From contig NIVC01000957.1 of assembly GCA_002269645.1 (NCBI GenBank), forward strand, positions 186,001 through 250,000: a stretch of 64,000 bases of DNA. Direction: 5' to 3'. Made by a program: the position numbers and the translations under genes. This DNA is from Macrostomum lignano. Taxonomy: Eukaryota. Positions 4,306 through 54,595 of this stretch are shown here, one piece after another; position 1 is the stretch's first letter, and each line of letters opens with the position of its first letter. The notes under the pieces were generated by a model, which made no database searches, was not told the origin of the DNA, and was given only the letters and a program-made list of their open reading frames with translations.

Positions 4306-4995
4306 TTAAAGCGGGGAGGCGTCAACTCCGCTGACCTCTGGGACAGGCAGTGCCAGGGCAGTTCTGGCACGATGCACCCTGCCGATCAGCTGCTCCCTGA
4401 ACCTCAGCATGCCCGGGTCGCGCGCTGTCGCCTTCCTCTGCTCACCCCTGTCGGCCCAGCTGCGGTAGTGCTGCAAGCCAGCGCTGTTGTAGTCAATGTA
4501 GGCTGTGGCCCTGCCTTGAAAATAGCTCTGCACATTGTGCACGCTCATGATTCGAACGTATTGCGGCCTCACAATCAGTTTCGACTGCGAGCCCTGCGCG
4601 TAGATTTCGGCCTCGCGTTGCAACTTCAGCAGGAAGCTGAGCCTCAGGCCAGAAATGGTGACGTTGGCTGACGTGACGGGGTCGCTGGGCCACTCCAGCC
4701 AGAACACCGCGTGCTGAAATGACAGGCCAGCCGTTTTGTTGTCTGACATGAAAGCATTAGTGTGGCAGGAATTGAAATTCCTTTGCCAGGGTGCGGGAAG
4801 AGCGAATCCCATCCTCAGTGGATGTTTTGATTGTCTTTTAAATGCAAACATTGTGCATAAATTGGGCTTGTCCAAATTTCCTGGCCAATGCTGGGCGGAG
4901 ATGTCTGGGTCTGCTGGTTGCATCGGTAGGTGGTTGGTTGCTGCCGCCAAATATCCGGAATCCTGCGGACTTTCAGAGCTGGAAGTAAATGCCAA
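4306..4995 (-). CDS. Uncharacterised 229-aa ORF
   Basis: ATG-to-stop ORF outside repeats; the 3' two thirds has the same GC3-rich codon style as neighbouring genes; no family recognised. Confidence 0.55.
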   Translation of the reverse strand: MAFTSSSESPQDSGYLAAATNHLPMQPADPDISAQHWPGNLDKPNLCTMFAFKRQSKHPLRMGFALPAPWQRNFNSCHTNAFMSDNKTAGLSFQHAVFWLEWPSDPVTSANVTISGLRLSFLLKLQREAEIYAQGSQSKLIVRPQYVRIMSVHNVQSYFQGRATAYIDYNSAGLQHYRSWADRGEQRKATARDPGMLRFREQLIGRVHRARTALALPVPEVSGVDASPL

Positions 4996-15960: not shown

Positions 15961-17083
15961 CGGTCTGATGCGTCAGGTGCCGCCGAAGCTCCTGGTGCGG
16001 CTGGCCCCTCCCGTGACCGGACCTCTGCCCGTGTGGAAGCTCCCACGGCCGTGGAGGGATCCAAAGCGGGGGGCGCTGGCCAAACCACAAAGCCGAAGCG
16101 AACCTACGCGGCTATGGCCAAAAGGCAGCCGGCCCTGGTTATCCAAGGCCAGGAGACGCCTCTTACGGCCGAACAGCTCGACCTTATCTGGCGCAGGTTG
16201 GACTCCCACCTGGTCAAGATGGCCTTGAGCGGCACTACCATTCGAGTCCAAAAGACGAAAGTCGAGGACCAAGCCCTCTATATCCAGCCCACCGACAGCC
16301 AGTCAGGACAGCAGCTCCTCGAGCTGCTGAAAACCTTCGACTGGGGTACGGAGCTGGAGAACCTGTTCATCTACAGGGAGGACGAGCGACCCCGGACACA
16401 CCGGCACCGTGCCTGGATTCCGGCTCGCAGCTGCATCACCAAGGCCGACGAGCTGCGTCACCTGCTAGTGGCTTCCAACCCGGAGCTACCGGCCAACGGT
16501 GTCGTAGTTCACGAGACCATCTCCAAGCCAGGCGGAGACGGTTTCACGGCTATTCTTGGACTGTCGGATAGCTGGATGCTCCGCTACCCGGACATGTCCA
16601 TCATCTCTGTCGGGCTGTTGCAGATTCAGCTCTTTAGCTTTGAGTCTGACGCCACCCGCCCACCGCCCCGGAGAAGCGTAAGCGGGCAGTCGGGGGCTCT
16701 GCCGGGCGGAAACGCCCAGGAAAAGAAGCTCCCGGTCGTCACGACCCCTCCGAGGACGTGGACCCTGTCAGAGGGAAAGCCGCGAAAGCTGCAGCAACAG
16801 GCGGACGTGGAAAGGGCCGGAAACCCGCCCGGAACACTATCCGCTCTGGTCTAACTCAGCGCGCGAAGCAGCTGCTGGACACCGCCAAGGCCCCCAACCG
16901 CAGCCACCCCCAGCCCAGTGTCACCACTGCGGCCCCCCGGAAAACCGGGCCGAGAGCGAGAATGCCGCCCAGGTAGCGACCTCGCCCTCGACCATGGAAT
17001 CCATCCGGGAGGAGCCCATGGAGCTGGAGCCTGGAGCTATCGGCGAGGCAGAAGAGGCAGCTCTCCTGCACAACTCGCCTTGA
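15961..17083 (+). CDS. LINE ORF1 (gag-like), truncated at the 5' end, two apparent -1 frameshifts (~16660, ~16935)
   Basis: The frame continues via basic APEKRKRAVGG.. and ends ..MESIREEPMELEPGAIGEAEEAALLHNSP*. The core LTAEQLDLIWRRL..QALYIQP resembles LOA-type ORF1 (DUF4780-like; recalled, not searched). Confidence 0.65.
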
Positions 17084-17130
17084 GCCGGCAGGAAGCTGCG
17101 CGGACCACTCGTGGAATTCCCGGAGTGGAC

Positions 17131-20826
<3,696 letters not shown>

Positions 20827-27749: not shown

Positions 27750-28212
27750 TATTATTGGACTTTGAGTGGATTGATGAGCAGGCCTGCGCCTCCCGGCTGC
27801 AATTATGCGTTTATTAATCAATCTAGTGTAGGGGTAGGGGTGTCCGCGCAATTTTTATTTTCAATCTCCTCTTTTAATTTGTTAGCCAGGAGTTGTGTAC
27901 TGTCTCGGGAAACTTTTTACTCGTAATCGAATGGTGCAAGTTTCATAAAGATCGGTTGAGCAGTTTTTTTTCTAAAATAAATCACACAAATAGAAACAAA
28001 TAGTAAACAACTCATTTTTAGTATATAGGAAGGAAATAAAACTAGCAATCTGCACCCCCATTGTGGGGCAACAAAGAATAAAATATATATTTTTTAATAA
28101 ACTATTAATAGCTTTTAACCTTGTACAGTTAATACTGCTAGTTTCTTATGAAAACATGATGAAGCAAACAAGCATCAGCCCTGAAGACCAGCTATCTAGC
28201 CTAAGATATCAG

Positions 28213-29183
28213 CAGTGATGGGCACCACTAAATTTGTTGTTAGCGCCACTAATTAGCGCTGTTGCTAACTGGTAGAAGAAAAAAATTAGCGATTGCTAAT
28301 AGTGGGCGCTATTTCTACTTTGAATTTAGCGCAATCAGCGCCACTAATAGTGAAATGCGCTAATTAATAAATACATTTAATATAAACTGCTGTTTCACAC
28401 ATATTTATGCGTTTTTGCACATTTTTAACTCACATGTTTGAAATGAAAAAGCTAATAAAGCTATTGCTAATAATTTGTTTTTATTGTCAATCCTGATAAA
28501 AAATCCTCAAACCACTGAACTATCAGAGCAACAGTTGGTAGAAAGAGTTCCTGAATTACAATGCTGTTTGCCTTGAAAACATCAAGGGCCCATGCTACTG
28601 GAGCCATGACCTTATACTCTAAGAAGGAAAGCGAGATCATCAGCTTGTAACAGTGGTACAGGATTTATTAACCCTATCATCACCCTAATGATAAAGCCTG
28701 TCATTTTGCATCATTTCTTAGAATATCAAATGAGTTGAATGTTTAATTCTTTGATTAAATTATTAAATTAAATTAAATTAATCAACAACTTTTTGCTAAC
28801 AAATTAAAAGTAAGAAAACTTTTAAAACTAAATGACAAAAACAATATTGATTGTTGATAACAAAAGCAAAAAAAGAAATTCAAATTTTGTTTCACATTTC
28901 TAAGAAAATTAGAAACATTATAAGAGATTTAGTATAGGTTGATTATATAATCTCTAACTTATTACTCAAATAGGGTCTTATTTTAAGTATTAAACAGTCA
29001 TTACCTGTCTAGTTTTAGAGCAAAAAATGAATTTAGTGCAATTAGCAATTTTCAGAAAATATTAGCTGCACTTTGATAGCATGCGCTAATTGGAATTTCA
29101 GTTTAGTGAAATTAGTGGTGCTAACAAAACACTAGCAGTGCTTTAGCAGAATTCAAATTTAGTGGCACTAGTGCCCATCACTG
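28213..29183. mobile_element. Non-autonomous hAT-type DNA transposon (971 bp)
   Basis: Perfect 13-bp TIR CAGTGATGGGCAC...GTGCCCATCACTG; perfect 8-bp TSD GATATCAG (28205-28212, 29184-29191); subterminal AGCGC(C)ACTAAT motifs. Confidence 0.92.
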
Positions 29184-30671
29184 GATATCAGCATCTGATT
29201 TGAACCCTATGATGCTACAAAAACTTATTGCACATACATCTGCTAAATATAGAAATACAATTAAAACACTAAACTAATGAACTGGGAAACCGAAAAATAT
29301 AACATAAAACAATAAAAACCTGAATTTGTATAGCCATGATCTCCAATACGGGATCCTACACTAATCTGAGGCTATTTGGATTTTGGAGTTTTGGCAGGTT
29401 TAAATTTAATTTTTTTAAATCAACAAGAAGCACTTAAACAATTAGAGTTAAAGATTTTGTGAATGCTAGGATAGTGGACTCAGTATATTTGTTGTTAAAC
29501 ACACAGAGTTTTGATTTTTATATATGTAGAGATATAGTTTTGCTTTTATATTATCTTCTATGCAATATACTTATATCTAGACAACCTTTTGCGACATTTT
29601 TATTGCTTAGTTGATTAGTTTTGTAACAAATTCATTGGTATCCTATTATCAAGATTGACCAAGCTAGCCAAGTATTTTACATATATGCCTAGCCTTGCCA
29701 CCCAATTTTTATTAACTTCCTTAGTTGTTTTAGCCTAAATCTGCTTTATAAATTTTAGTGGCTAATGTACATTATGGCAAAACTAATAAGCAAGCTATTT
29801 ACAACTATAAGCTTGGCTTTTTGACTTATCAAAGTTCTCAGGTGCCTTTCTTCTTATAAAATAGCTTATATACTCTTCACAACTTATTGAACTAAAAATA
29901 GAAAGCTGTTTTGTTAAGTCTATGCCTATGTTACTACTGTGTGGCTCATTTAGTTATTTTAGCATCTGTGGGCCTAAGTAAAAAGTTGGCAATCTCTTAG
30001 TTTATTGTGTTAAATAAATTTTTAAGTTTTTTCTCAAATTGTTTAGCTAATTAGCCAACTCTGTAATGGTTAAAAGGCCTAGAGCACTAACTACCACAAT
30101 CTTTAAAGCTAACTGCCAAGCTTATCAATATCAATATCAACCTATAGGAGCCCACACTGTGATAGCCAACAATATGAGCTATTCACTAGTTGGCCATGTA
30201 TACTAATATGGCTATATAGGGATAGAATATGGCATGAACAAGGACATGATGGATGATGGTTCTTATCCTAAACTGCAATAAATAGATGTTGCTACCTATT
30301 ATCTAGCAGTATGTCTTTCAATGGCCTTGTTCTTCAATCAATGGCAGGTATAAAAAGGCCTACAATGGCCTACCAAATGGTATCTACATTTTTGGTACCC
30401 AATGTAAATGGTATCTACATTTTTGGTACCCAGTATTTTGGTGCCCTAGTTGGTGCTGTTGCATAAATTATAGGCCTAAATTAGAATTAGAAACAAAATA
30501 GAAATTTAGCCCTAAATTATTGCTTGATTGTTTGATAATTGCTTTGCAATCAAAAATCAAAATAATTGCTTCTCATTTTGTTAAGCTAATCTATTTTTTT
30601 ATTTTTTGAAAGTTTTTTTCATTTAAATTTTTGTCTCAATTTGTCAAAAAATCATAACATAATTCATACAT

Positions 30672-30827
30672 GCGCAACTTTGGGAATCACCCGGCCGTTT
30701 CTATTGGCAACACACACATGTAAGTCGCTATTGGCTGAGAGCAGTCACGTGACTACTATTCCGTCCAATAGCGACTTACATGTGTATGTTGCCAATAGAA
30801 ACGGCCGAGTGAATCCCAAGGTTGCGC
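30672..30827. repeat. Fold-back palindrome (63-bp arms, 30-bp loop), probable MITE
   Basis: Arms 30672-30734 and 30765-30827 with ~4 mismatches; the loop contains palindromic AGTCACGTGACT. Confidence 0.88.
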
Positions 30828-33179
30828 CCAAGCATGACATAATTACATGTTAGATGTTACTCAAGAAATCAAATCATTATTAAAAGAAATGTCACATTTC
30901 ATAATTTTGATCATAACTATATTTATAATACTATATATAATGTAGCATCATTGGTAGTTAGTTATATCTTGTTACCTAAATCTTCTTAGCATATATTTAA
31001 AGTGGCACCTTGTATGCATGGATATATAGCAAATGCAATTAAACTTCAATGGATATTTCAAAAAGCATGGAAACCTTCTAAATGCCCAAACCATACTATT
31101 ATGAACTAGAAACTACAGCCTATATTTTGTGGACCCAAATGACCTAACAATCCACACTAGGCCTAACACTTAGAGGTCTTAGGCCCACATCAAGGAAAAG
31201 TTTAGGGCCATGCATGGCACCTTGTATGTTCTCTTTGAGCGCCACCTTAACAAATATCTATGGCTCTGCCTGTTTTTAGAAGAGGTCTTCAAAAACTTCC
31301 TGTACTAGGTGGCTCACTATTTATATTATTAATTGATCTAACATTTACCTGACATGTTTATCTGACACACCTGACATTTTTGCTTGCTACTCATATTCCA
31401 CCTGGTATGACCATCTCTGTGTGAAAAAAACTGAAAAAATTAACACAGCAAACTAGGAGATAGACAAAAAGTTAGGCCTATGGCTATATCAAAATATTAT
31501 TATATTAGACCTAGCCTAGTAGGCCTAAACTTGGTTAAAGTAAAAACATTTTTTTGCAAAAATGATTACAGTGCCTAATAAGAAAAATGCAATAGAAAAA
31601 AAATTAAGATATAAAATTATTAATTGTTCCCTCCCTTTTTTAATTTTGTTGTTGTTTTTGTTGGTGGTAATTTTTGTGGCTATTCAACTTTTGCTCTTTG
31701 GCTTTGGCTCTTAGTCTTAATAACTGTCACTGACAACCACAGATTTAGTTAGGCCTAGTTGTAGGTTTATGATATGTTGTAGCATCTTATCAGTAATGTT
31801 GAAACTAACCACGCGCACGTCGACTGGTAATTATGTAAACGTAACTATTTAACCATGTAATCCTATATACTAAAAATCTATCCTAAAGATATAATTTTTG
31901 TACGTGCAACATGCGATCCAGAGTGACCATGCAGTCAGCATTTTGCCTTATTTAAAAAAATTAATCAATTTAACAAAATAAATGTTCGGCTCTCTTAATT
32001 TTCAAAAAAAGGTATTTAAGTAGATTTTTTAAAAAGATAATTTATTAAATTAATTTCTCATAGTTGTTTTTCTATTAACTAATTACCAATTAACGATTAC
32101 ATTCAATCATTTTTTAATTGAACCACCACAAATGCTTACCTAAAGCTTTGCTTTAAATGTCCTATTTCTGGTTACTTTTTTTAATATATTTTATTTTTAA
32201 ATGCCTAATATTGCCAGCAATCCTTATATACTGGTATATTTATTATTGATAGGTTAATATACTGAACTACCTATTTGAATCATGTTTTGAATGAATCGCT
32301 TTCTATCAAAACCTTTCATACCTGTCATACAGTATCCCTACTAAATACCTTGTCATTCGTTGTTAGTCGTTATTAGTCGTTAAAGCTCGATAATACCGTT
32401 AAGAAAATTTACAGACGCGTTTTCAATCATAAGTTTTTACGAATATCACCATTTAAAAGTACCCTACATTTTCTCGAACAATTATTACATTGAAATACAC
32501 TGCCTTATATTGGCCAAACAGGCTCCCAGCCTGAGCTAAACTTACCAACTTACTTACATGCGTTTCAGGTTTACTGATGTAAACTTTTAATACTTTTTCG
32601 CAATTCGAAAATCAGCGGTTCCACGCACGCGTGGCGGGTATTCTGATGTTACATGTATATCCAATAAAAAAGTGTGGTCCCTACATGTAAATATTTATGC
32701 GAATGATGCTAAAAAATATCCTAGCTAATTTTTTTACACTAATTCATGACGCACTACAGTTTCGTGAGGCAGATTTAGTCTTTGCACAGTCTACGGTGAC
32801 AATGTGCACCATTGCTTGTGCACCAGTCCATCTAAGAAATCATTATGTTAAGCATGCAAATTAAGAGCCAGACTGGCGCTTTGGCGCGGTCACAGGCAGT
32901 TAAGCGGCTAAAGTAAGCTAAATATTAGTCTAACGATCTCCGAAAGTGACAATGCATCTACATCATCGCTATCCGTCGACGCGTTAACACATTTAGTGCC
33001 AAAAGCGTGCAGTTATGTGTACTTTTACATGTACTTCTGGGAATTTGGTAATGAAATAGTACATTTAGTAGTGTATGAAGGCTCGCCAGCGCAAGAACCC
33101 CCTGCAAAAGTCCTCTCTGTCCCTGCATGGCGGTTGCGACCTTAGCCCCAGTCCCTAAAGCAAGTTGAAGCAAGTTGAA

Positions 33180-33369
33180 GCAACATGTTTTGTAAGTTAT
33201 ATCAAAATAAGAGCTTTGTATCTGCTTCCAATAAAAAGCTATCACACCATTTTAAAGTGAAAAAAGTTAAAAGTTCCTATCTCGCTAGTGCATTTTTCCG
33301 TGAAAATCAGCCTTTAATAAATTTTCCAAGAAACGAAGTGTCCCGTCCTTCTTCTTCTAGTGGTCCTTG
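33180..33369. mobile_element. Remnant right end of the CAAGG-terminated MITE family
   Basis: ..AAGAAACG..CCCGTCCTTCT..GTCCTTG parallels 34425-34463; no left end or TSD found. Confidence 0.55.
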
Positions 33370-34017
33370 ATTTCAAAGAGCAGGACGATTAGCAAAAGTT
33401 CAAATGCCATAGACAAATGTACAGCATTGAAAAATTACTTATGGCACACACAAGCGAAATAGCTGGAGCAGGCTTTAACCACTCTTCAAATCTTGTTATA
33501 CGTCGATCTTGACGAAATTGATTTGTCGTTCGACCAATTATTTATGGATATGGAGTCAGCTCATGCGACAAGAGTCAATAGCGATGACACACCCTGCGAG
33601 ACCGCTTGGTAATAAAACTGACGGCTGAAGATCTACAACGACGTCTGGACGACACCTGGAAGGCTTGACTAATGGCTGAGAATCCTCAGTGATGGCGCTG
33701 CCCCTAGAACTGATTCGTCTTGCTGTCTCCAGCTCTCAACAGATTGACGTTCGCGTTGAACCTCTTGGATCGACAGGTCAGGATACTGTACCACCTGCTG
33801 AAAAAAACAAAAGGTTCTATCGAGGTGGAGATTGCATGACGGTGAGAGGTTTGTAAGGTTTTTTAAGTGATTGTAGTAAAACATTCAATAAACTTTGTTT
33901 GAAGCTAATTGATCAAACTGTTATTTGCTGTATCTTGTTTATTTGCTATTTTGTACTATATGTTTGCCATCGTGAAGACACTTTTGTTTTACGTTTTTTA
34001 CGGCCCAGTGCATGTAT

Positions 34018-41043: not shown

Positions 41044-41090
41044 TATATAAGAACTCAGCAGAGCGGCCCTCTCAGCCGCCTTTTTCAGTC
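41044..41090 (+). promoter_or_regulatory. Candidate TATA box and initiator of the prohormone gene
   Basis: TATATAA at 41044-41050; TCAGC/TCAGT ~30-40 nt downstream; donor CCAAG|gtaatt at 41179/41180 implies a non-coding first exon. Confidence 0.5.
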
Positions 41091-41303
41091 GAGAGAGAAA
41101 CAATTAGCGTAGTCGCTTGAAGGTCTCCGCCTGCCCGGGCTCCACAAACGCGCTGACACACTTAGAAGAGAACGCCAAGGTAATTAATAGCTTTCAAATC
41201 TTCTTTCCTTCTTTGCATGTTTCGAATTCAGTTCTCTACGTGTTGAATTATCCTGTACAGTACGAGCGTAACTGCTTCGTAACAACTTAGAGCCGGATCT
41301 GCC

Positions 41304-42039
41304 ATGGTGCATCCAACAAAAAGCCTGCTGATTGTCGCTGCCTGCCTAGCCGTCGCTTACGGATCCAAGGTGAGCAGGTTAACTAGCTCGTCAATGAGTT
41401 CACTGAGAAGAAAATTGTGCACGAAACTTCGTCTCAAACTTTCAGGCTGCCGGTGTTCACGACGTTGACAAGAAGAGCAAAGGCTTTGAAAAAAGGTCAA
41501 ATCCTCTCGTCGACTCCGGCCCGAACTATGAGTACGCCAGCCTTCAACATCCGTACGGCATGAAGCGATTCGACCCTCTGTCCGGCATGAAGCGCTTTGA
41601 CCCACTGTACGGCATGAAGCGATTCGACCCACTGTCCGGCATGAAACGCTTTGACCCACTGTACGGCATGAAGCGATTCGACCCACTGTCCAGCATGAAG
41701 CGCTTTGACCCACTGTCCGGCATGAAGCGCTTTGACCCACTGTACGGCATGAAGCGCTTCGACCCACTGTACGGCATGAAGCGCTTTGACCCACTGTCCG
41801 GCATGAAGCGCTTTGACCCACTGTACGGCATGAAGCGATTTGACCCACTGTCCGGCATGAAGCGCTTTGACCCACTGTCCGGTATGAAGCGATTCGACCC
41901 TCTGTCCGGTATGAAGCGATTCGACCCACTGTCCGGTATGAAGCGCTTCGACCCACTGTCCGGTATGAAGCGATTCGACCCACTGTCCGGAATGAAGCGA
42001 TTTGACCCTCTGGCCGGCATGAAGCGGTCAAAGAATTGA
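41304..42039 (+). CDS. Neuropeptide prohormone (pedal peptide/orcokinin-type), exons 41304-41369 and 41446-42039, 219 aa
   Basis: gccATG; signal peptide MVHPTKSLLIVAACLAVAYGS; phase-0 intron AAG|gtgagc..tttcag|GCT; 17 KR-flanked FDPL(S/Y/A)(G/S)M peptides; AATAAA at 42059-42064. Confidence 0.92.
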
Positions 42040-42261
42040 CGAAAAACAGTCAATAACCAATAAAAAACGAATACTTGACCAGCATATAGTGTTTCCGTGT
42101 GTCCTAGAAACTTTCTACTCAAATAGACACGAGGTTAGCATCGCTTCATTCATGATGAATGTCTCAGAAGACTGGAATGCTTGTTGCTAATAACACGGGG
42201 GTTTTTTCTGAGTTCTTTTGTCTCTACCAGCTGGAAGCAACATAGTTATGTTCTGTACTTT

Positions 42262-43249: not shown

Positions 43250-46200
43250 CTACAGACCAGAATCCTGAAGCTGGTATCTGAGTGAGTGCATTCGAAACAC
43301 GAGGGCAGAAACGTGCTGCGCTATCTGTTTCCATATCTCTGTCTCGTTAGACCGCTTCTTGGCCACCGCCAGGAGGTCCTGAAGGCCCGGGAACCCGGCC
43401 GAAATTTCCGTCTCCTCCGTCTGGGAGGAGAACACCAGATTTCGCAGCGTCTTGTCGCGCAGCAGAGCTCCAGGATCCGCTAGCGTCTGCATGACCCGCA
43501 TCCGACGATCGTTGAAGCCGCGCACCGACATCGGATCGATGTCCTCACTGCCCGCGTCGATGCGCTCCTGCAGCTGCTGCACTGCCGAGCCAAGCCGGGC
43601 GCTCTCAGCCTCCAGAGCTGTCAGCGCGCTATCGAACTCTTTCCAAGTGTCGTTCACGTACTTGTCGTACTTGGCCGCGCTCGCGGGCCAGCCCCACTGC
43701 GACGGTGGAGTGGCAGAGTTGAAGCGATTTCGAATGTTCGCAATCAAAGCGGCCTCGTCGTACGGGAGAAGCCAAGTTTCGGACAACAGTCGCAGCATCT
43801 CAACGCCCCAGATGGCCACCTCGCCGTGAGCTCGCAGGCCAGGATCGATAATACTCTCCATCACGGGCAGCGTTTCGTACATCGAATGATACAGCGGGTA
43901 GTACGAGCTGTACTTCGGATCGGCCACGTAGCTCGCATCGATAATCGGTACTGCAGCCGTCTGTATGAAGGCGGAGTAGTCGCTGGAGCCAATCGGAACG
44001 CTGAGCCTGTAGTCTTGGTCTAGCCAGCGTCTCTTAAACTCCTCGAACATGGTCCCGCCGTCCTGGGCCGGCAGGTTTTTCAACGCCTGCAGGGCCGCCT
44101 CCTGGAGCAGCGGGTCTGCATTCGTACGAATTGAGTAGTTTCCACGCACTGCGATGTCGATGTTGATGTAGGCTACCACTTTCTAGACAAGGAAGTAAAG
44201 AATGTGGGACAGCTTCCTGTTTGTGTACGCTATCATTAGCTCCTGTACTCTAAACAAATTCTTAAAAAGAAGTTTTCTCATACCTCCCTAATCTGCGGAA
44301 GGCGATCTTCCACCCATTCCCAGCTGCCGGTGATGCCCTGCTCCTCGACGTCCCAGCTACACAGAAGGATGCTGCGCCGCGGTCGCCAGCCGTCAGAGTA
44401 GAATTGGCCGAGCATTCTGGCAATTTCCAGCAGCACCGCGCTGCCACTGGTGGCATCGACCGCCCCGGCACCCCAAGCATCGCGGTGATTGCCAAGAAGG
44501 ACGTATCTGCAGACATTGCAAGTAAAAAACATCCCATTATGCCTGTAGGCTCTATTCAGGGGGAATTCACATTGTTAATTGAGCATTATACTACTACAAA
44601 CGCAGCCTTTTTAGACCTGTATCCGTTTTTTTGCTCATTAAGTCTAATACAGTAAGCTTCTCTGTGAATTGGTTCGAGAATATATCGCTGTGAACTGCGT
44701 CTGAAGTGTTGCCATGCGAGTCTACCTTTAGGCACAGTTAATTACGAGTGTAGTCTATCACTATACAGATATATCAGCTTTGATTAACTATTGCAAGCTT
44801 GTAAATACCAAGCATTACTCGCAGCGGCGAAGTGTGACGAAGAACTCAAATTATTATCAGACTCCCGAACCAAAAATGGTAAAAACCGCACATTTGGAAC
44901 CAATTAAAAGTCAAATCACCTGTCCGGTTCCAAGTCGCCTTTCATCTCCGCGAACACATTCACCGCGTTGACACCTTCCAAGATTCGATTATTGACAACT
45001 AGTCTGGCATGATCCACGCCAGGTGCAAAGCTGCCTCCAGCTCGATAGTCGATCGGCAGGCCGCCCTTTACGTACGAGCTGATGTTGGCGCCCTCGAGTA
45101 CGCCCAGCAGCTTCATGGCGTCTCCGTAGCCAACGGGATAGCCTGGAATCGGGGAGAAGACCGGCGGATCCGTTTGCTGTTTGATTTCGTCGAATTCGTC
45201 GCGATAGGCGAACGGCAGCGAGGGATAGGCGGGCGTCTGCGGGTCGGCCTGGCGCATTTTGGCGCTGCCGCGTTGAACGCCAGTGGGTGGCAGCCACCAG
45301 GAGTTCGGGTAAACGTCGTCAAGCCTGCCCGGCACCGCCCAGCCGTCGGCAGGGTCGGAGTAAACAATGCCACCAGTGCAGCCGTAGGCGGCCGCGTTGA
45401 CAAGTTTCTTGCCGCGACCGACGCCACCGTAGCGCATGAGGGCGATGGCGCCGCTCAGAGTGACGTTCAGCTGCTGCAGATACTCAAAGTCGCGCTCTCT
45501 GCCGTAGTTCGCGAATACGACTGGGCCAGAGACGTTTCCCGAGGGCGTGAAGGAGAGGATCGGTGGCACCTGTCAGATTTAGCGTGGGTGGCAGGAATGA
45601 ATATACCGGTAAATATACATGTATAGGAGGCAGATCCAGTGTTCATCTTTTGATATGTTGTGCCTTTCTTATTGCTCTATCGATATTCATAAAGCTTTTC
45701 GTTCAGAAATAGTTTTAAAGGCAGGTTTCACCGGAAAAATACACTACGGAGATAGGAAATTTCACGATTTTCAACACTAAAACAGTGATTGGGTCTCTTA
45801 ACAGTGTCAGAGAAAGTTCTAATCACACTGTTTTGTGCCTTACATTCTGCTCTAACTACACATTAATCGATTTTTCATGTTAAATTGGTCTTGTCATTTT
45901 TTAAACGTTTTTTAAGTGAAAAAAGTGCATCGCAATACGCTCACACAGGGTGTACAGCGGGCCTGACTTTCTAATCTGTAAAGTCTCTGTGCCTTCAGGA
46001 CTTTTTCCTCATCGGTGGGAGTCGCACAAAAACTTGTCGTCCCATTTTCGCGTACAAGCCCCAAACGAATGTGGCCGCGAATCAGGGGTCCGGGGGTCGT
46101 AGCAAAGGTTCAGGTGCGTTTACCACTAAGCTGCACTGTGACCCCTTCGAAGCGGAGGTCTGATCTCTGCACATTCACATACCTCAGTGATGAAAGAAAT

Positions 46201-47906: not shown

Positions 47907-50457
<2,551 letters not shown>

Positions 50458-51450: not shown

Positions 51451-51949
51451 TGTCGCCTACACAAGTCAACAGTGTTGGAACTTATAAAGATTTTCGCGCA
51501 AAATCGAGAGATATTTACTTGAATTGATGGAGGCCTGAATAAATCTAACCACACTCATTTTTATTTATTACAATTGTACTCGAATCTGTGTGTACATCAG
51601 TAGAGTTGCATGGCAAAGACTAAGAGACCAAGCCACCCTCCTGGTCACGAGACCATTGTCACTGCGCTGTTTATCAGAACCTTTGTGCTCACTGGGGCCG
51701 CCGACTGCCTCATACACACGGGTTGCGTGTTTTATCGATAGATAGCTCCATGAAGCAGTGCGGTTACGTCACTGTGCAGACGGGCAATCTCGCCACGCTG
51801 TCTAATAGCATAGGGGCTTATCGTGTACGCGCTACACAGTTCCAAATGAGTATAAAGGCGCTGGACAGCTGACTTGCCGATTGGATCTAGCAAGTTGCAT
51901 ATTTGACTCGTCACTGTTTGCTGAGACAACGAGAATCTTTATATTTGGA

Positions 51950-54595
51950 ATGTTTCTGTTGGGCATTGGGCTGCTGTGCCTGACGCTTTCTGTGCCCAGG
52001 GCTGCACCAGCTCGACAGGAGTCCGAGGTGACTTCACCGGCCGCAACAACTGCACCTGCTGCTGCTTCGGGTTACAGCTCTATTCAGGTAGAATCAAGCA
52101 CAAATGCACCAGCTCCAAATGAGTCCAGGTTGACTGCACCGGCCGCAACAACTGCACCTGCTGCTGCTTCGGGTTACAGCTCTATTCAGGTAGAATCAAG
52201 CACAAATGCACCAGCTCCAAATGAGTCCAGGTTGACTGCATCGACCATACCTGCACCCGAAACTACTACATCATCTGACAACTCTGCTTGGAAAGAATCA
52301 ACCACAACTGCACCTGCTGCTGCATCAATTCAATTTGAGTCCATGTTGAATGACGCATCAACTACAACTGCACCAGCAACTCCACCAGCTCATAAGTCTA
52401 CTTTGAGAGACTCTACCAAAATTGTACCTGCCACTGCATCAACTCGAGTTCAGTCCAATTCGACTACTCCAACCAAATCTGCAACCGACAATACTGAATC
52501 AGCTGACGAGTCGTCGTGGACAAAATCAACTGCAGCTGCTCCTGATGCTGCATCGGCTCGGTTAGAGTCCGACTTCACTGCATCAGCCACAACTGCGCCT
52601 GTTGCTGAAAGTGCTCACGAGTCCACTTCAACAGCGGCACCTGTTTCGTCGTCTTTTACCATAGCGAAGCCCCATCGGGGTGAAAGTCTATCGAGTCCAA
52701 CAGCGGAGGCCACGGGTCGCTGCGGCCTGCTAATTCGCAGCAACCTGTACCGGTGCAGCGACCGGCCCAACTGGTGGCTGTCAAAAGCCGACCTAAACGA
52801 GTTGAAACTTCGGCTGCTTGCGGGCCAATCGGAGTCCATCTGCTGCCGGGACTGGCGGAATCAGGCCATCTATTCGAACCTGAACCAGCACCGGGACAGC
52901 GCGGCTGGCTCCCGGATGCGAATCAACTGCCCCCTGGCACTGGCCACCAGTCAATCTTCCCTTGACAACGCCTTGACAACAGTTGTGACTGGCTCGGAGC
53001 TGCACTGCTACAATCTGTGCAACACAACCCTAGCCCTGGGCGATGGCGGCCGCACGCACTATAACTTGTTCCTGCCGATCCAATATGCGCCCGTCAAATG
53101 TCAATGGCGACTCAAAGGCGTGAGTAAAGTCGTCATCAGGTGAGCAGTCTCATTCTTTTTAGATGCTGTATGAGCTTGCAAACAATACCGGTGTTACCGA
53201 GTGACAATATGACCGAGTAACAATATGACCGAGTGACAATATGACCGAGTGACAATATGACCGAGTAACAATATGACCGAGTGACAATATGATCGAGTGA
53301 CAATATGACCGAGTGACAATATGACCGAGTGACAATATGAACGAGTGACAATATGACCAAGTGACAATATGACCGAGTGACAATATGACCAAGTGACAAT
53401 ATGACCGAGTGACAATGTGACGCAATACAAAGCATTAACCGTCAATAAACATAATTTTCAGCAAGAGCCAGATGCAGGCCTGGGATCAGCTTCGCCCGTT
53501 CCTGTGCCTGTCGGACGGGACTCGCCTCGGGGCTTGCGGTTCGGAGCGCGCATCTGGTCAGGTATATCCGCTGACCAGCTCGGCAACTGAAGTTCTGCAG
53601 TGCCGCAGTGGCGACTGCCTTCTATGGTACGATTGGAGATCAGCGATCGCGTCTCAGCGCCGGTTTGACTTTCGCAGCTTAAAAGTGGAGCTTTTTGGCT
53701 GGGCTGCAGTGAGTTTTTGAGTTTTTCTATTCAAGTTTCCGCTAACTGCCTGCATTGTCTACGGGTCTTCTGGTGCGCCCTCTATGGCACCTCTGTACGA
53801 GCGTAAATCTGCACCTGTCTGTTCCCTATTCGGACATCTCTTAGCATTGATGCCAGTCTGTTTTCATGCCCTCAAAAAGTACACCAAATACCCGACAATT
53901 AAAATTGCTCCTTCCTTGCTAGCTAGTGTTAGTAATAGCCACTGCACTTACATTTGGGGAACCTCAGCGACTTTCGAATAAAAGTACACAAGGTTCGATT
54001 CCGTGAGCGGCCACATTTTGATCAGCCCCAGGCCTCCTGAAAACTGACCCAATAGCTGCTAAACTCGCCTCCCACCCAGCCCACTTCCGGACCAGAGGCG
54101 CCCGCTTTGCCGCAGCAGCGAAGACCCCGGCCAGCCTCTCTGACGACTGCCGCAACACCGACAGCAGCCGGAAGCCGCCCAGCCGGCCCGCCCTCACAGC
54201 CGCCGCTGCCGAGGTCCTCGGAGAAATTCCCACTGGAGTTCCGCGTCACCCGCGGCGTGATGGCCGGCGTCACGGCTGCCGCGGTGGCGCTGATCTGCGC
54301 TGCCGCCTGCATCTGGGGCTGCCGCAGCTGGCACTACCGCATGTACAGCTCGCCACTGCGTCGCCTCCTGGGCCGGACGCCGCTGCACCGCCTGCCGACC
54401 TACTCCAGCCGGCTGTTCGACCTCGAGCAGCTGCGACTCGACCAACCGTGCAGCGCAAAGGAGGCGCCCGACGCTTCCGAAGCCACGCCTTCGTCGTCGG
54501 ATGAGGAGGACGTCGACGAAGAGGAAGACGACGGGGTGGAGGAGATCGACATGATGATGGAGCTGGTCGCGGGTGAGGTTCCGCGTCGGGCTTAA
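51950..54595 (+). CDS. Type I membrane protein with mucin-like S/T stalk and Cys-rich/CUB-like ectodomain; exons 51950-53139, 53462-53708, 54080-54595 (650 aa)
   Basis: Signal MFLLGIGLLCLTLSVPRA; S/T/A-rich stalk with a 102-bp duplication; KCQWRLKG..LCLSDG..GACG; TM GVMAGVTAAAVALICAAACIWGC; acidic tail; phases 2 and 0 are compatible. Confidence 0.78.
53195..53420. repeat. 16-bp minisatellite (GAGTGACAATATGACC), intronic
   Basis: Direct periodicity. Confidence 0.95.

What the first reader, a model, noticed from the sequence alone, without database searches (positions are those of the whole stretch)
41304..42064. Neuropeptide prohormone hidden in what looks like a minisatellite: 17 FDPL(S/Y)GM peptides
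Seen: a 66-nt signal-peptide exon splices in phase 0 to an exon encoding AAGVHDVD-KK-SKGFE-KR-SNPLVDSGPNYEYASLQHPYGM-KR, then 17 KR-delimited heptapeptides (10 FDPLSGM, 5 FDPLYGM, 1 FDPLSSM, 1 FDPLAGM). Unlike the neighbouring arrays, unit variation is mostly synonymous (CGA/CGC, TTC/TTT, AAG/AAA, CCT/CCA, GGC/GGT/GGA) and never changes length, which indicates protein-level constraint. TATA, Kozak and AATAAA signals are present. Known: KR is the prohormone convertase site; FD-initial non-amidated repeats typify pedal peptide/orcokinin precursors, and planarian pedal-peptide prohormones carry FDPI-type peptides. Inference: a new or lineage-specific family member. The peptides end in Met, so they are not amidated. 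Repeat masking and the ORF track both miss the signal peptide.
Basis: partly seen in the sequence, partly recalled or inferred. Interest (0 to 1): 0.8.

Follow-up and report, generated by a model that had tools for sequence, protein, structure and literature searches.

The report
Flatworm FDPL neuropeptide precursor gene
What looks like a 27-base minisatellite is a real two-exon gene of the flatworm Macrostomum lignano, encoding a secreted precursor with 17 copies of the small peptide FDPL(S/Y)GM; it is a new member of a neuropeptide family already known in planarians and schistosomes, not a new kind of gene.

Summary
A 66-nt signal-peptide exon (41304-41369), a 76-nt GT..AG intron and a 594-nt exon (41446-42039) give a 219-aa product with 17 KR-flanked heptapeptides: 10 FDPLSGM, 5 FDPLYGM, 1 FDPLSSM, 1 FDPLAGM. 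Variation among units is frame-specific. In the coding frame, 14 distinct DNA units give 4 peptides, with 25 synonymous and 7 non-synonymous differences. The other five frames give 8-13 peptides. A column-permutation test gives P = 0.002.

A UniProt Macrostomum lignano gene model (A0A1I8FZM5, "Secreted protein", a fragment) is 62/63 identical in the non-repeat part and uses the same splice junction. A second M. lignano protein carries FDPLIM repeats.

The closest known relatives are not pedal peptide/orcokinin precursors. They are the flatworm FDP[I/L] family: Schmidtea spp-15 (8x FDPIQFG) and spp-16 (QFDPIMY), and Schistosoma npp-26 (NFDPILF and others). These are confirmed by mass spectrometry and expressed in neurons. 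One npp-26 peptide is a candidate ligand of SmGPCR9.

The window protein aligns with SPP-15 ungapped and in register, but needs about 34% gaps against planarian pedal-peptide-like PPP-1.

Verdict: a real prohormone gene and a new member of a known family. The pedal peptide/orcokinin link is a resemblance only. No transcript or peptide data could be reached.

The parts
41044..41050 (+). TATATAA, candidate TATA box about 255 nt upstream of the ATG
   Evidence: Pattern located. Its role is inferred only. A candidate non-coding first exon would end at 41179 (GCCAAG|GTAATT).
41180..41260 (+). Candidate 5'-UTR intron (GTAATT...GTACAG), or alternatively a trans-splice acceptor at 41260/41261
   Evidence: Read from the sequence. 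There is no transcript evidence. The 5' extension of P0001 does not match the window upstream of 41289, so this part is a weak inference.
41304..41369 (+). Coding exon 1, 66 nt: MVHPTKSLLIVAACLAVAYGSK. It holds the signal peptide, with predicted cleavage AYG|SK after codon 20 (41363).
   Evidence: Translation. The hydrophobic core is at aa 7-18 (Kyte-Doolittle 9-mer maximum 3.16), with Lys at position 6, Ala at -3 and Gly at -1. P0001 aa 48-74 matches this exon.
41370..41445 (+). Intron, 76 nt, GTGAGC...TTTCAG, phase 0
   Evidence: Read unspliced, the frame hits a stop after 54 codons. P0001 skips exactly this stretch.
41446..41562 (+). Start of exon 2: the non-repeat propeptide AAGVHDVD-KK-SKGFE-KR-SNPLVDSGPNYEYASLQHPYGM. 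The last spacer peptide ends in HPYGM, a degenerate copy of the repeat.
   Evidence: Over the 63 aa of signal peptide plus non-repeat propeptide (exon 1 and this stretch), 62 are identical to P0001; the single difference (V26 here, G in P0001) lies in this stretch.
41563..42021 (+). 17 tandem 27-nt units, each KR + heptapeptide: 10 FDPLSGM, 5 FDPLYGM, 1 FDPLSSM, 1 FDPLAGM
   Evidence: Frame-specific synonymous variation. In-register match to Smed-SPP-15.
42022..42039 (+). C-terminal tail KR-SKN and TGA stop
42059..42064 (+). AATAAA polyadenylation signal, 20 nt after the stop codon
   Evidence: function inferred

Best explanation
The locus is a two-coding-exon gene of Macrostomum lignano, or a very close relative. 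It encodes a 219-aa prepropeptide of the flatworm FDP[I/L] neuropeptide family, whose known members are Schmidtea spp-15 and spp-16 and Schistosoma npp-26.

Proposed mechanism:
1. The N-terminal signal peptide, cleaved about AYG|SK, takes the precursor into the secretory pathway.
2. A prohormone convertase cuts after each KR, and after the one KK. M. lignano has a neuronal, essential PC2 homologue.
3. A carboxypeptidase removes the basic residues.
4. Each precursor therefore yields 17 free-acid heptapeptides (10 FDPLSGM, 5 FDPLYGM, 1 FDPLSSM, 1 FDPLAGM) plus spacer peptides.
5. The peptides are not amidated, because no Gly precedes the KR.
6. The peptides are most likely released by neurons and act on a class-A GPCR, by analogy with NFDPILF of SmNPP26, a candidate ligand of SmGPCR9 acting through Gq.

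Shown: the gene structure, the frame-specific constraint, a paralogous gene model with the same splice junction, and the sequence and architecture match to SPP-15, SPP-16 and NPP-26.

Inferred: expression, processing, neuronal location and receptor.
For: 1. Structure and counts.

2. Protein-level constraint confined to one frame. There are 25 synonymous and 7 non-synonymous differences. 14 DNA unit variants give 4 peptides, against 8-13 peptides in the other five frames. The permutation test gives P = 0.002. There are no indels.

3. Independent gene model. P0001 (UniProt A0A1I8FZM5, M. lignano 'Secreted protein') scores E = 1.8e-75 and is 62/63 identical before the repeats. It matches as two blocks that correspond to exon 1 and exon 2. 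Its array has a different order of units but the same two main peptides.

4. A second M. lignano precursor, P0002 (A0A1I8HH48), carries RFDPLIM(R)K repeats.

5. Family match. BLASTP against Smed-SPP-15 is ungapped, in register and 58% identical over 78 aa, E = 4e-26. A profile of the window protein, P0002, SPP-15, SPP-16 and NPP-26 retrieves only schistosomatid (Schistosoma and Heterobilharzia) NPP-26 orthologues, Smed-SPP-16 and the two M. lignano proteins.

6. The family is genuine. FDPIQFamide/FDPIQFG, FDPIMFamide and QFDPIMY were found by mass spectrometry, and spp-15 and spp-16 are expressed in cephalic ganglia and nerve cords (PMC2953531). NPP-26 peptides were found by LC-MS/MS (PMC9495596). 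NPP-26 marks a neuron cluster in the miracidium (PMC11349301). NFDPILF gave a Gq BRET signal with SmGPCR9, and npp26 RNAi causes motility and gonad phenotypes (PMC13367911).

7. A PC2 homologue in M. lignano is nervous-system specific and essential (PMC4490696).

8. Signal-peptide features.
Against: - No transcript, peptide or expression data for this locus could be reached. The look-up of encoding contigs found nothing for P0001, P0002 or the window ORF.
- P0001 is a different copy (allele, homeologue or paralogue), so this particular copy could be silent.
- The homology rests on a 4-residue core (FDP[I/L]) plus precursor architecture. The pairwise E-values are inflated by repetition.
- The peptide C-terminus (S/Y-G-M) differs from the x-[F/Y] ending of SPP-15, SPP-16 and NPP-26.
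- No signal-peptide predictor was available, only heuristics.
- The SmGPCR9 response needed 1 uM peptide, and the authors treat the receptor as a candidate.
Confidence: 0.8

Rival explanations
1. It is a pedal peptide/orcokinin (PP/OK)-type precursor. On this reading FDPL(S/Y)GM is a shortened PP/OK peptide.
For: - The core [F/Y]-D-P-[I/L], followed by small residues and a hydrophobic, non-amidated end, recurs in PP/OK-type peptides.
- Examples are starfish ArPPLN1b FGGKGAFDPLSAGFTD and planarian PPP-1 RSFYDPIGGGLL.
- FDPLSGM and FDPLSAGF share FDPLS, a Gly and a hydrophobic residue.
- Multi-copy, KR-flanked architecture.
Against: - The documented PP/OK-type peptides seen here are 11-18 residues. 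These are 7.
- Alignment to PPP-1 needs about 34% gaps and gives E = 1e-4, against an ungapped E = 4e-26 for SPP-15.
- Schmidtea keeps ppp-1/2 and spp-15/16 as separate genes, which the authors classed separately (file 5).
- No paper found links the two families.
- Seven residues cannot establish orthology.
Confidence: 0.12
2. It is a real secreted multi-copy peptide precursor, but made in non-neuronal cells such as gland, epidermal or reproductive-tract cells. The peptides would act as a pheromone, seminal or defence peptide rather than a neuropeptide.
For: - KR processing by furin-type or PC enzymes is not confined to neurons.
- spp-15 and spp-16 are also expressed in sub-epidermal cells and the pharynx.
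- No expression data exist for this locus.
Against: The relatives are predominantly neuronal: cephalic ganglia and ventral nerve cords, neuron cluster markers, and a punctate in situ pattern.
Confidence: 0.06
3. It is a neutral minisatellite whose open frame and flanking signals are fortuitous, or a silent or decaying duplicate of the expressed gene.
For: - The window holds more than 25 minisatellites, several with open frames.
- All three minus-strand frames of this array are open too. One even reads KR/NR-delimited FMPDSGS.
- No transcript evidence exists for this copy.
Against: - Frame-specific synonymous variation, P = 0.002.
- An intact ATG, signal peptide, splice sites, stop codon and AATAAA.
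- Near-identity to an annotated gene model across the non-repeat part.
- Membership of a family verified by mass spectrometry.
- The pure-chance version is effectively excluded. Only the 'silent copy' version remains.
Confidence: 0.02

Closest known systems
Smed-spp-15 (secreted peptide prohormone-15, GenBank BK007013), Schmidtea mediterranea; Collins et al. 2010, PMC2953531
   Same: - Signal peptide, then one spacer peptide ending in a degenerate copy of the repeat, then a tandem array of KR + 7-residue units beginning FDP[I/L].
- The same 9-residue period.
- An ungapped, in-register alignment, 58% identical.
- Peptides confirmed by mass spectrometry, and expression in cephalic ganglia and ventral nerve cords.
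   Different: - SPP-15 units end in Gly (FDPIQFG) and are amidated to FDPIQFamide. The window peptides end in Met and cannot be amidated.
- Ile in place of Leu at position 4.
- Q-F in place of S/Y-G at positions 5-6.
- 9 copies against 17.
Sma/Sja-npp-26 (Smp_071050) of Schistosoma, and Smed-spp-16 (BK007042)
   Same: - Short non-amidated peptides with an FDPI core flanked by KR: NFDPILF, SYFDPIIY, QFDPIMY.
- They are retrieved together with the M. lignano proteins by one profile.
- The second M. lignano precursor (FDPLIM, P0002) fits their FDP[I/L]-x-hydrophobic pattern closely.
   Different: - NPP-26 and SPP-16 have fewer (4-6) and more heterogeneous copies, with N-terminal extensions (N, SY, EH, Q) and longer spacers.
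- Their C-terminal residue is aromatic (F/Y), not Met.
- There is no Gly at position 6.
- Function is known only for the schistosome gene: a candidate ligand of SmGPCR9, a neuronal marker, and RNAi phenotypes.
Pedal peptide/orcokinin-type precursors (Smed-ppp-1/2; starfish ArPPLNP1/SMP; Aplysia pedal peptide and arthropod orcokinin from general knowledge)
   Same: - Multi-copy, dibasic-flanked, non-amidated peptides.
- An [F/Y]D-x-[I/L] motif followed by Gly/Ser and a hydrophobic end.
- FDPLS is shared literally with the starfish peptides.
   Different: - The peptides are 11-18 residues with the FD motif internal, and the period is 14 or more residues.
- Alignment is only gapped and weak.
- Planarians keep these as genes distinct from the FDPI family.
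UniProt A0A1I8FZM5 (P0001), Macrostomum lignano 'Secreted protein'
   Same: Same gene family, and probably the same gene in another copy or haplotype: 62/63 identical before the repeats, the same splice junction and the same two main peptides.
   Different: - It is a fragment: it runs off its end after about 7 repeats and is extended at the N-terminus by translated 5' UTR.
- Gly in place of Val at residue 26.
- Repeat order Y,Y,S,Y,Y,Y,Y against S,Y,S,Y,S,S,Y,Y...
- It is unnamed and uncharacterised.

Membership tests
Flatworm FDP[I/L] peptide precursors (spp-15 / spp-16 / npp-26) | N-terminal signal peptide on a short precursor (100-220 aa) | tested here: met
   Hydrophobic core at aa 7-18, with an AYG|SK cleavage motif. 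This is a heuristic only, because no SignalP was available. The UniProt paralogue is named 'Secreted protein'.
Flatworm FDP[I/L] peptide precursors (spp-15 / spp-16 / npp-26) | Several copies of 6-8-residue peptides flanked by KR and starting with (x)F-D-P-[I/L] | tested here: met
   17 copies of KR-FDPLxxM. Reference peptides. All known members have Ile; here it is Leu.
Flatworm FDP[I/L] peptide precursors (spp-15 / spp-16 / npp-26) | Peptide ends x-[F/Y], with or without amidation, directly after the FDPI core | tested here: inconclusive
   The window peptides end [S/Y]-G-M, one residue longer and with Met as the hydrophobic end. The paralogue P0002 (FDPLIM) fits better.
Flatworm FDP[I/L] peptide precursors (spp-15 / spp-16 / npp-26) | Detectable sequence relationship of the whole precursor | tested here: met
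   The alignment to SPP-15 is ungapped and in register, E = 4e-26, though inflated by repeats. Profile search A1 retrieves only family members. The non-repeat parts show no convincing similarity.
Flatworm FDP[I/L] peptide precursors (spp-15 / spp-16 / npp-26) | Neuronal expression and processed peptides detectable by mass spectrometry | not testable with these tools
   No M. lignano transcript or peptidome data were reachable.
Pedal peptide / orcokinin (PP/OK) type precursors | Multi-copy, dibasic-flanked, non-amidated peptides on a secreted precursor | tested here: met
   This is a generic feature, shared with many neuropeptide families.
Pedal peptide / orcokinin (PP/OK) type precursors | Peptide length about 11-20 residues, with residues N-terminal to the acidic motif | tested here: not met
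   The window peptides are 7 residues and start at F-D. PPP-1/2 peptides are 11-12-mers and ArPPLN1a-e are 13-18-mers.
Pedal peptide / orcokinin (PP/OK) type precursors | Motif [F/Y/L]-D-x-[I/L]...G/S-rich...hydrophobic C-terminal part | tested here: inconclusive
   FDPL-SG-M resembles FDPL-SAG-F(TD) and YDPI-GGG-LL. The match is too short for any statistic, and BLASTP to PPP-1 is gapped with E = 1e-4.
Pedal peptide / orcokinin (PP/OK) type precursors | Orthology shown by cluster analysis across phyla or by a shared receptor | not testable with these tools
   PP/OK receptors were unknown as of PMC5656890. A search for separate PP-like precursors in M. lignano found none, but the database holds few flatworm proteins.

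The most novel reading that the evidence does not exclude
The M. lignano FDPL(S/Y)GM peptides could be an intermediate form. They combine the FDP[I/L] core of the spp-15/npp-26 peptides with the Gly-containing, hydrophobic, non-amidated end of PP/OK peptides. That would show that the flatworm FDPI family is a shortened offshoot of the bilaterian pedal peptide/orcokinin family. In that case the candidate NPP-26 receptor (SmGPCR9-type class-A GPCR) would point to the still unidentified PP/OK receptor.
Probability: 0.12. Interest if true: 0.65.

Novelty: new member of a known kind. Interest (0 to 1): 0.3.

Why it matters
- It adds a complete, correctly spliced precursor with 17 peptide copies to the flatworm FDP[I/L] neuropeptide family.
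- It places that family in Macrostomorpha. By general knowledge of flatworm phylogeny, not tested here, this is an early-branching lineage of Rhabditophora, which would make the family older than the planarian-schistosome split.
- M. lignano is a transgenic, transparent model animal. The gene therefore offers an accessible way to study a peptide family that in schistosomes affects motility and gonads and is considered a drug-target lead.
- As a practical annotation point, coding peptide arrays can be lost to repeat masking in this minisatellite-rich genome. The existing UniProt model of the paralogue is truncated and unnamed.
- It is not a new kind of system.

Tried and rejected
- **Exhaustive HMMER search with the full protein.** Apart from P0001, the top 150 hits I sampled were long proteins with 9-residue periodic repeats, such as RTX-type GGxGxDxLx arrays and other low-complexity proteins. 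The search gave nothing on relatives.
- **The look-up of encoding contigs.** Nothing is on record for P0001, P0002 or the 159-aa window ORF. The spliced 219-aa product was not accepted. So there is no transcript contig and no DNA of paralogues.
- **Pfam scan of the precursor and P0002.** No family.
- **Rfam and tRNA scans of the window.** Nothing.
- **Profile of Smed-PPP-1/2, to look for separate pedal-peptide-like genes in M. lignano.** Two hits without a source name, none traceable to M. lignano. Inconclusive.
- **Literature.** No paper contains FDPLSGM, FDPLYGM, FDPLSSM, FDPLAGM or FDPLIM. McVeigh et al. 2009 and Koziol et al. 2016 are not held, so I cannot exclude that a supplementary table there lists an M. 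lignano npp-26-like gene.
- **Minus-strand reading (KR/NR-delimited FMPDSGS).** Rejected. It gives 8 distinct peptides, 8 synonymous against 21 non-synonymous differences, and no signal peptide.
- **'Open reading frame' as evidence.** Rejected as non-diagnostic, because many neighbouring arrays are open too.

Full report
**1. Observation**

The sequence is exactly as described.
- An ATG at 41304 (context CCATGG) opens a 66-nt exon encoding MVHPTKSLLIVAACLAVAYGSK.
- A 76-nt intron follows (41370-41445, GTGAGC...TTTCAG, phase 0).
- The second exon (41446-42039) encodes AAGVHDVD-KK-SKGFE-KR-SNPLVDSGPNYEYASLQHPYGM.
- Then come 17 units of 27 nt (41563-42021), each KR plus a heptapeptide: 10 FDPLSGM, 5 FDPLYGM, 1 FDPLSSM and 1 FDPLAGM.
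- The reading frame ends with KRSKN and TGA. The product is 219 aa.
- Read unspliced, the frame stops inside the intron.
- Tandem Repeats Finder sees the array as period 27, 17.4 copies, with no indels.
- TATATAA lies at 41044-41050 and AATAAA at 42059-42064.

**2. Is it more than chance?**

An open frame is not evidence here. The window holds more than 25 minisatellites and several are open in one or more frames. This array is also open in all three minus-strand frames. One minus frame even reads a KR/NR-delimited FMPDSGS.

What sets the + frame apart is the pattern of variation.
- Eight columns vary. Five are third codon positions and purely synonymous.
- Against the consensus there are 25 synonymous and 7 non-synonymous differences, although only 23% of possible single-base changes are synonymous.
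- Fourteen distinct DNA units collapse to four peptides in this frame.
- The other five frames give 8-13 distinct peptides and at most 8 synonymous differences.
- I re-dealt the observed variant patterns to random columns, which keeps the genealogy of the units. This gives at most four peptides without a stop in 0.2% of 20,000 trials.

**3. Organism and independent gene model**

A protein search found two relatives, both from the free-living flatworm Macrostomum lignano.

P0001 (UniProt A0A1I8FZM5, 'Secreted protein', 181 aa, a fragment):
- It is identical at 62 of 63 residues before the repeats.
- It matches the window as two blocks that coincide with exon 1 and exon 2, so the model uses the same YGSK|AAG junction.
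- Its array has a different order of units (Y,Y,S,Y,Y,Y,Y), so it is another copy or haplotype. It still encodes the same two main peptides.

P0002 (A0A1I8HH48) carries a run of RFDPLIM(R)K units. M. lignano therefore has at least two kinds of FDPL precursor.

The window thus most likely comes from M. lignano or a very close relative.

**4. What family?**

The primary source (Collins et al. 2010, PMC2953531) shows otherwise.

| Gene | Peptides | Notes |
|---|---|---|
| Smed-spp-15 | 8x FDPIQFG, processed to FDPIQFamide; FDPIMFamide | Source of FDPI peptides |
| Smed-spp-16 | QFDPIMY | Free acid |
| Sma/Sja-npp-26 | NFDPILF, SYFDPIIY, SYFDPILF, EHFDPIIY | Source of FDPI peptides |
| Smed-ppp-1 | RSFYDPIGGGLL | Pedal-peptide-like 12-mer |
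| Smed-ppp-2 | SYFDKIGNDLL | Pedal-peptide-like 11-mer |

- The window protein aligns with SPP-15 without gaps and in register. Both have a 9-residue period (KR + 7). Identity is 58% over 78 residues, E = 4e-26.
- Against PPP-1 the alignment needs about 34% gaps and reaches only E = 1e-4.
- Both E-values are inflated by repetition. The contrast between them is what is informative.
- The architecture is also the same as SPP-15: a signal peptide, a spacer peptide ending in a degenerate copy of the unit (HPYGM here, YYPIILFD there), then the array.
- A profile built from the window protein, P0002, SPP-15, SPP-16 and NPP-26 retrieves only schistosomatid (Schistosoma and Heterobilharzia) NPP-26 orthologues, SPP-16 and the two M. 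lignano proteins.
- Pfam has no model for any of this.

One caveat: the SPP-15 and NPP-26 sequences I used were corrected from machine-read supplement text, using the peptide tables of the same paper and PMC9495596.

**5. What is known about that family**

- SPP-15 and SPP-16 peptides were sequenced by MS/MS. Both genes are expressed in the cephalic ganglia, the ventral nerve cords, the pharynx and sub-epidermal cells.
- All six NPP-26 peptides were found by LC-MS/MS in cercariae as free acids (PMC9495596).
- NPP-26 is the unique marker of one neuron cluster in the miracidium, with weak signal in the apical gland cell (PMC11349301).
- In 2026, NFDPILF was reported to bind the class-A receptor SmGPCR9 (Smp_244240) in a yeast two-hybrid system and to give a Gq BRET signal at 1 uM. 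Smnpp26 showed a punctate neuronal in situ pattern. Its RNAi caused curling, reduced motility and gonad defects (PMC13367911).

**6. Mechanism proposed**

Shown: gene structure, frame-specific constraint, a paralogous gene model and the family match.

Inferred:
- signal-peptide cleavage near AYG|SK (hydrophobic core aa 7-18);
- convertase cleavage after KR and KK;
- carboxypeptidase trimming;
- release of 17 free-acid heptapeptides plus spacer peptides from neurons;
- action on a class-A GPCR related to SmGPCR9.

It is also a real difference from planarian SPP-15.

**7. PP/OK link**

It cannot be dismissed. FDPLSGM shares FDPLS, a Gly and a hydrophobic end with starfish FGGKGAFDPLSAGFTD, and it resembles YDPIGGGLL. 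But the peptides are half the usual length and the alignment is weak. Planarians keep the two families as separate genes. Seven residues cannot carry an orthology claim.

A search for separate PP-like precursors in M. lignano found none, but the database holds few flatworm proteins, so that test is inconclusive. I rate PP/OK membership at about 0.12. I record as the 'novel case' the idea that the FDPI family is a shortened PP/OK offshoot. That idea would make SmGPCR9-type receptors candidates for the PP/OK receptor, which was still unknown in 2017.

**8. Limits**

- No RNA-seq, transcript contig or peptidome of M. lignano was reachable.
- The exhaustive HMMER search was swamped by unrelated 9-residue repeats.
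- Two key subscription papers (McVeigh 2009; Koziol 2016) are not held. A prior listing of M. lignano npp-26-like genes cannot be excluded.
- No held paper contains the peptide sequences.

**9. Verdict**

The gene is a new member of a known kind, the flatworm FDP[I/L] neuropeptide family. It is already represented in UniProt by an unnamed, truncated model of a near-identical copy. Interest is modest (0.3). It is useful for annotation and for comparative flatworm neurobiology, but not surprising to a specialist.

Noticed in passing
not in the window: protein P0002 (UniProt A0A1I8HH48, M. lignano): A second M. lignano precursor fragment carries about 8 RFDPLIM(R)K units. It is misnamed 'PSCyt2 domain-containing protein' in UniRef. 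Its hexapeptide FDPLIM fits the schistosome/planarian FDPI-x-hydrophobic pattern better than the window peptides do.
   Followed up: partly
window 41357-42122, minus strand: The array is open in all three minus-strand frames. One frame reads KR/NR-delimited FMPDSGS/FMPYSGS peptides. This is a mirror artefact of the unit, with no conservation (8 distinct peptides) and no signal peptide.
   Followed up: yes
window 43250-45569, minus strand: Exons of a gene with a PA domain and a transferrin-receptor-like dimerisation domain (glutamate carboxypeptidase II / M28B-like). It is convergent with the prohormone gene, and its stop codon lies about 1.2 kb downstream of the AATAAA.
   Followed up: partly
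window 16918-19527, plus strand: An 869-aa ORF with endonuclease/exonuclease/phosphatase and reverse transcriptase domains, that is a non-LTR (LINE-type) retrotransposon.
   Followed up: partly
window 51881-53143, plus strand (repeat at 52003-52318): A 420-aa ORF with a hydrophobic N-terminal segment and an Ala/Pro/Ser/Thr-rich region built from 102-nt repeats (mucin-like). No Pfam match.
   Followed up: partly
window 4306-4995, minus strand: An ORF with a weak match to glycosyltransferase family 92 (E = 1.3e-5).
   Followed up: no
window 48331-49716: A 1.4-kb (GTCT)n microsatellite with 345 copies. It creates several spurious long ORFs on the plus strand.
   Followed up: no
window 28000-34000: An AT-rich block (GC 0.31-0.37, against about 0.50 elsewhere) with no ORF of 130 aa or more and no tandem arrays apart from a 26-bp two-and-a-half-copy repeat at 33158-33183. 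Nature unknown.
   Followed up: no
whole window: More than 25 minisatellite arrays with periods of 16-102 nt cover a large share of the 64 kb. No Rfam family and no tRNA gene was found.
   Followed up: partly
database result, not in the window: A perfectly periodic 9-residue peptide array draws thousands of significant phmmer hits to unrelated 9-residue repeat proteins, such as RTX-type GGxGxDxLx arrays. This is a trap for homology searches with multi-copy neuropeptide precursors.
   Followed up: yes
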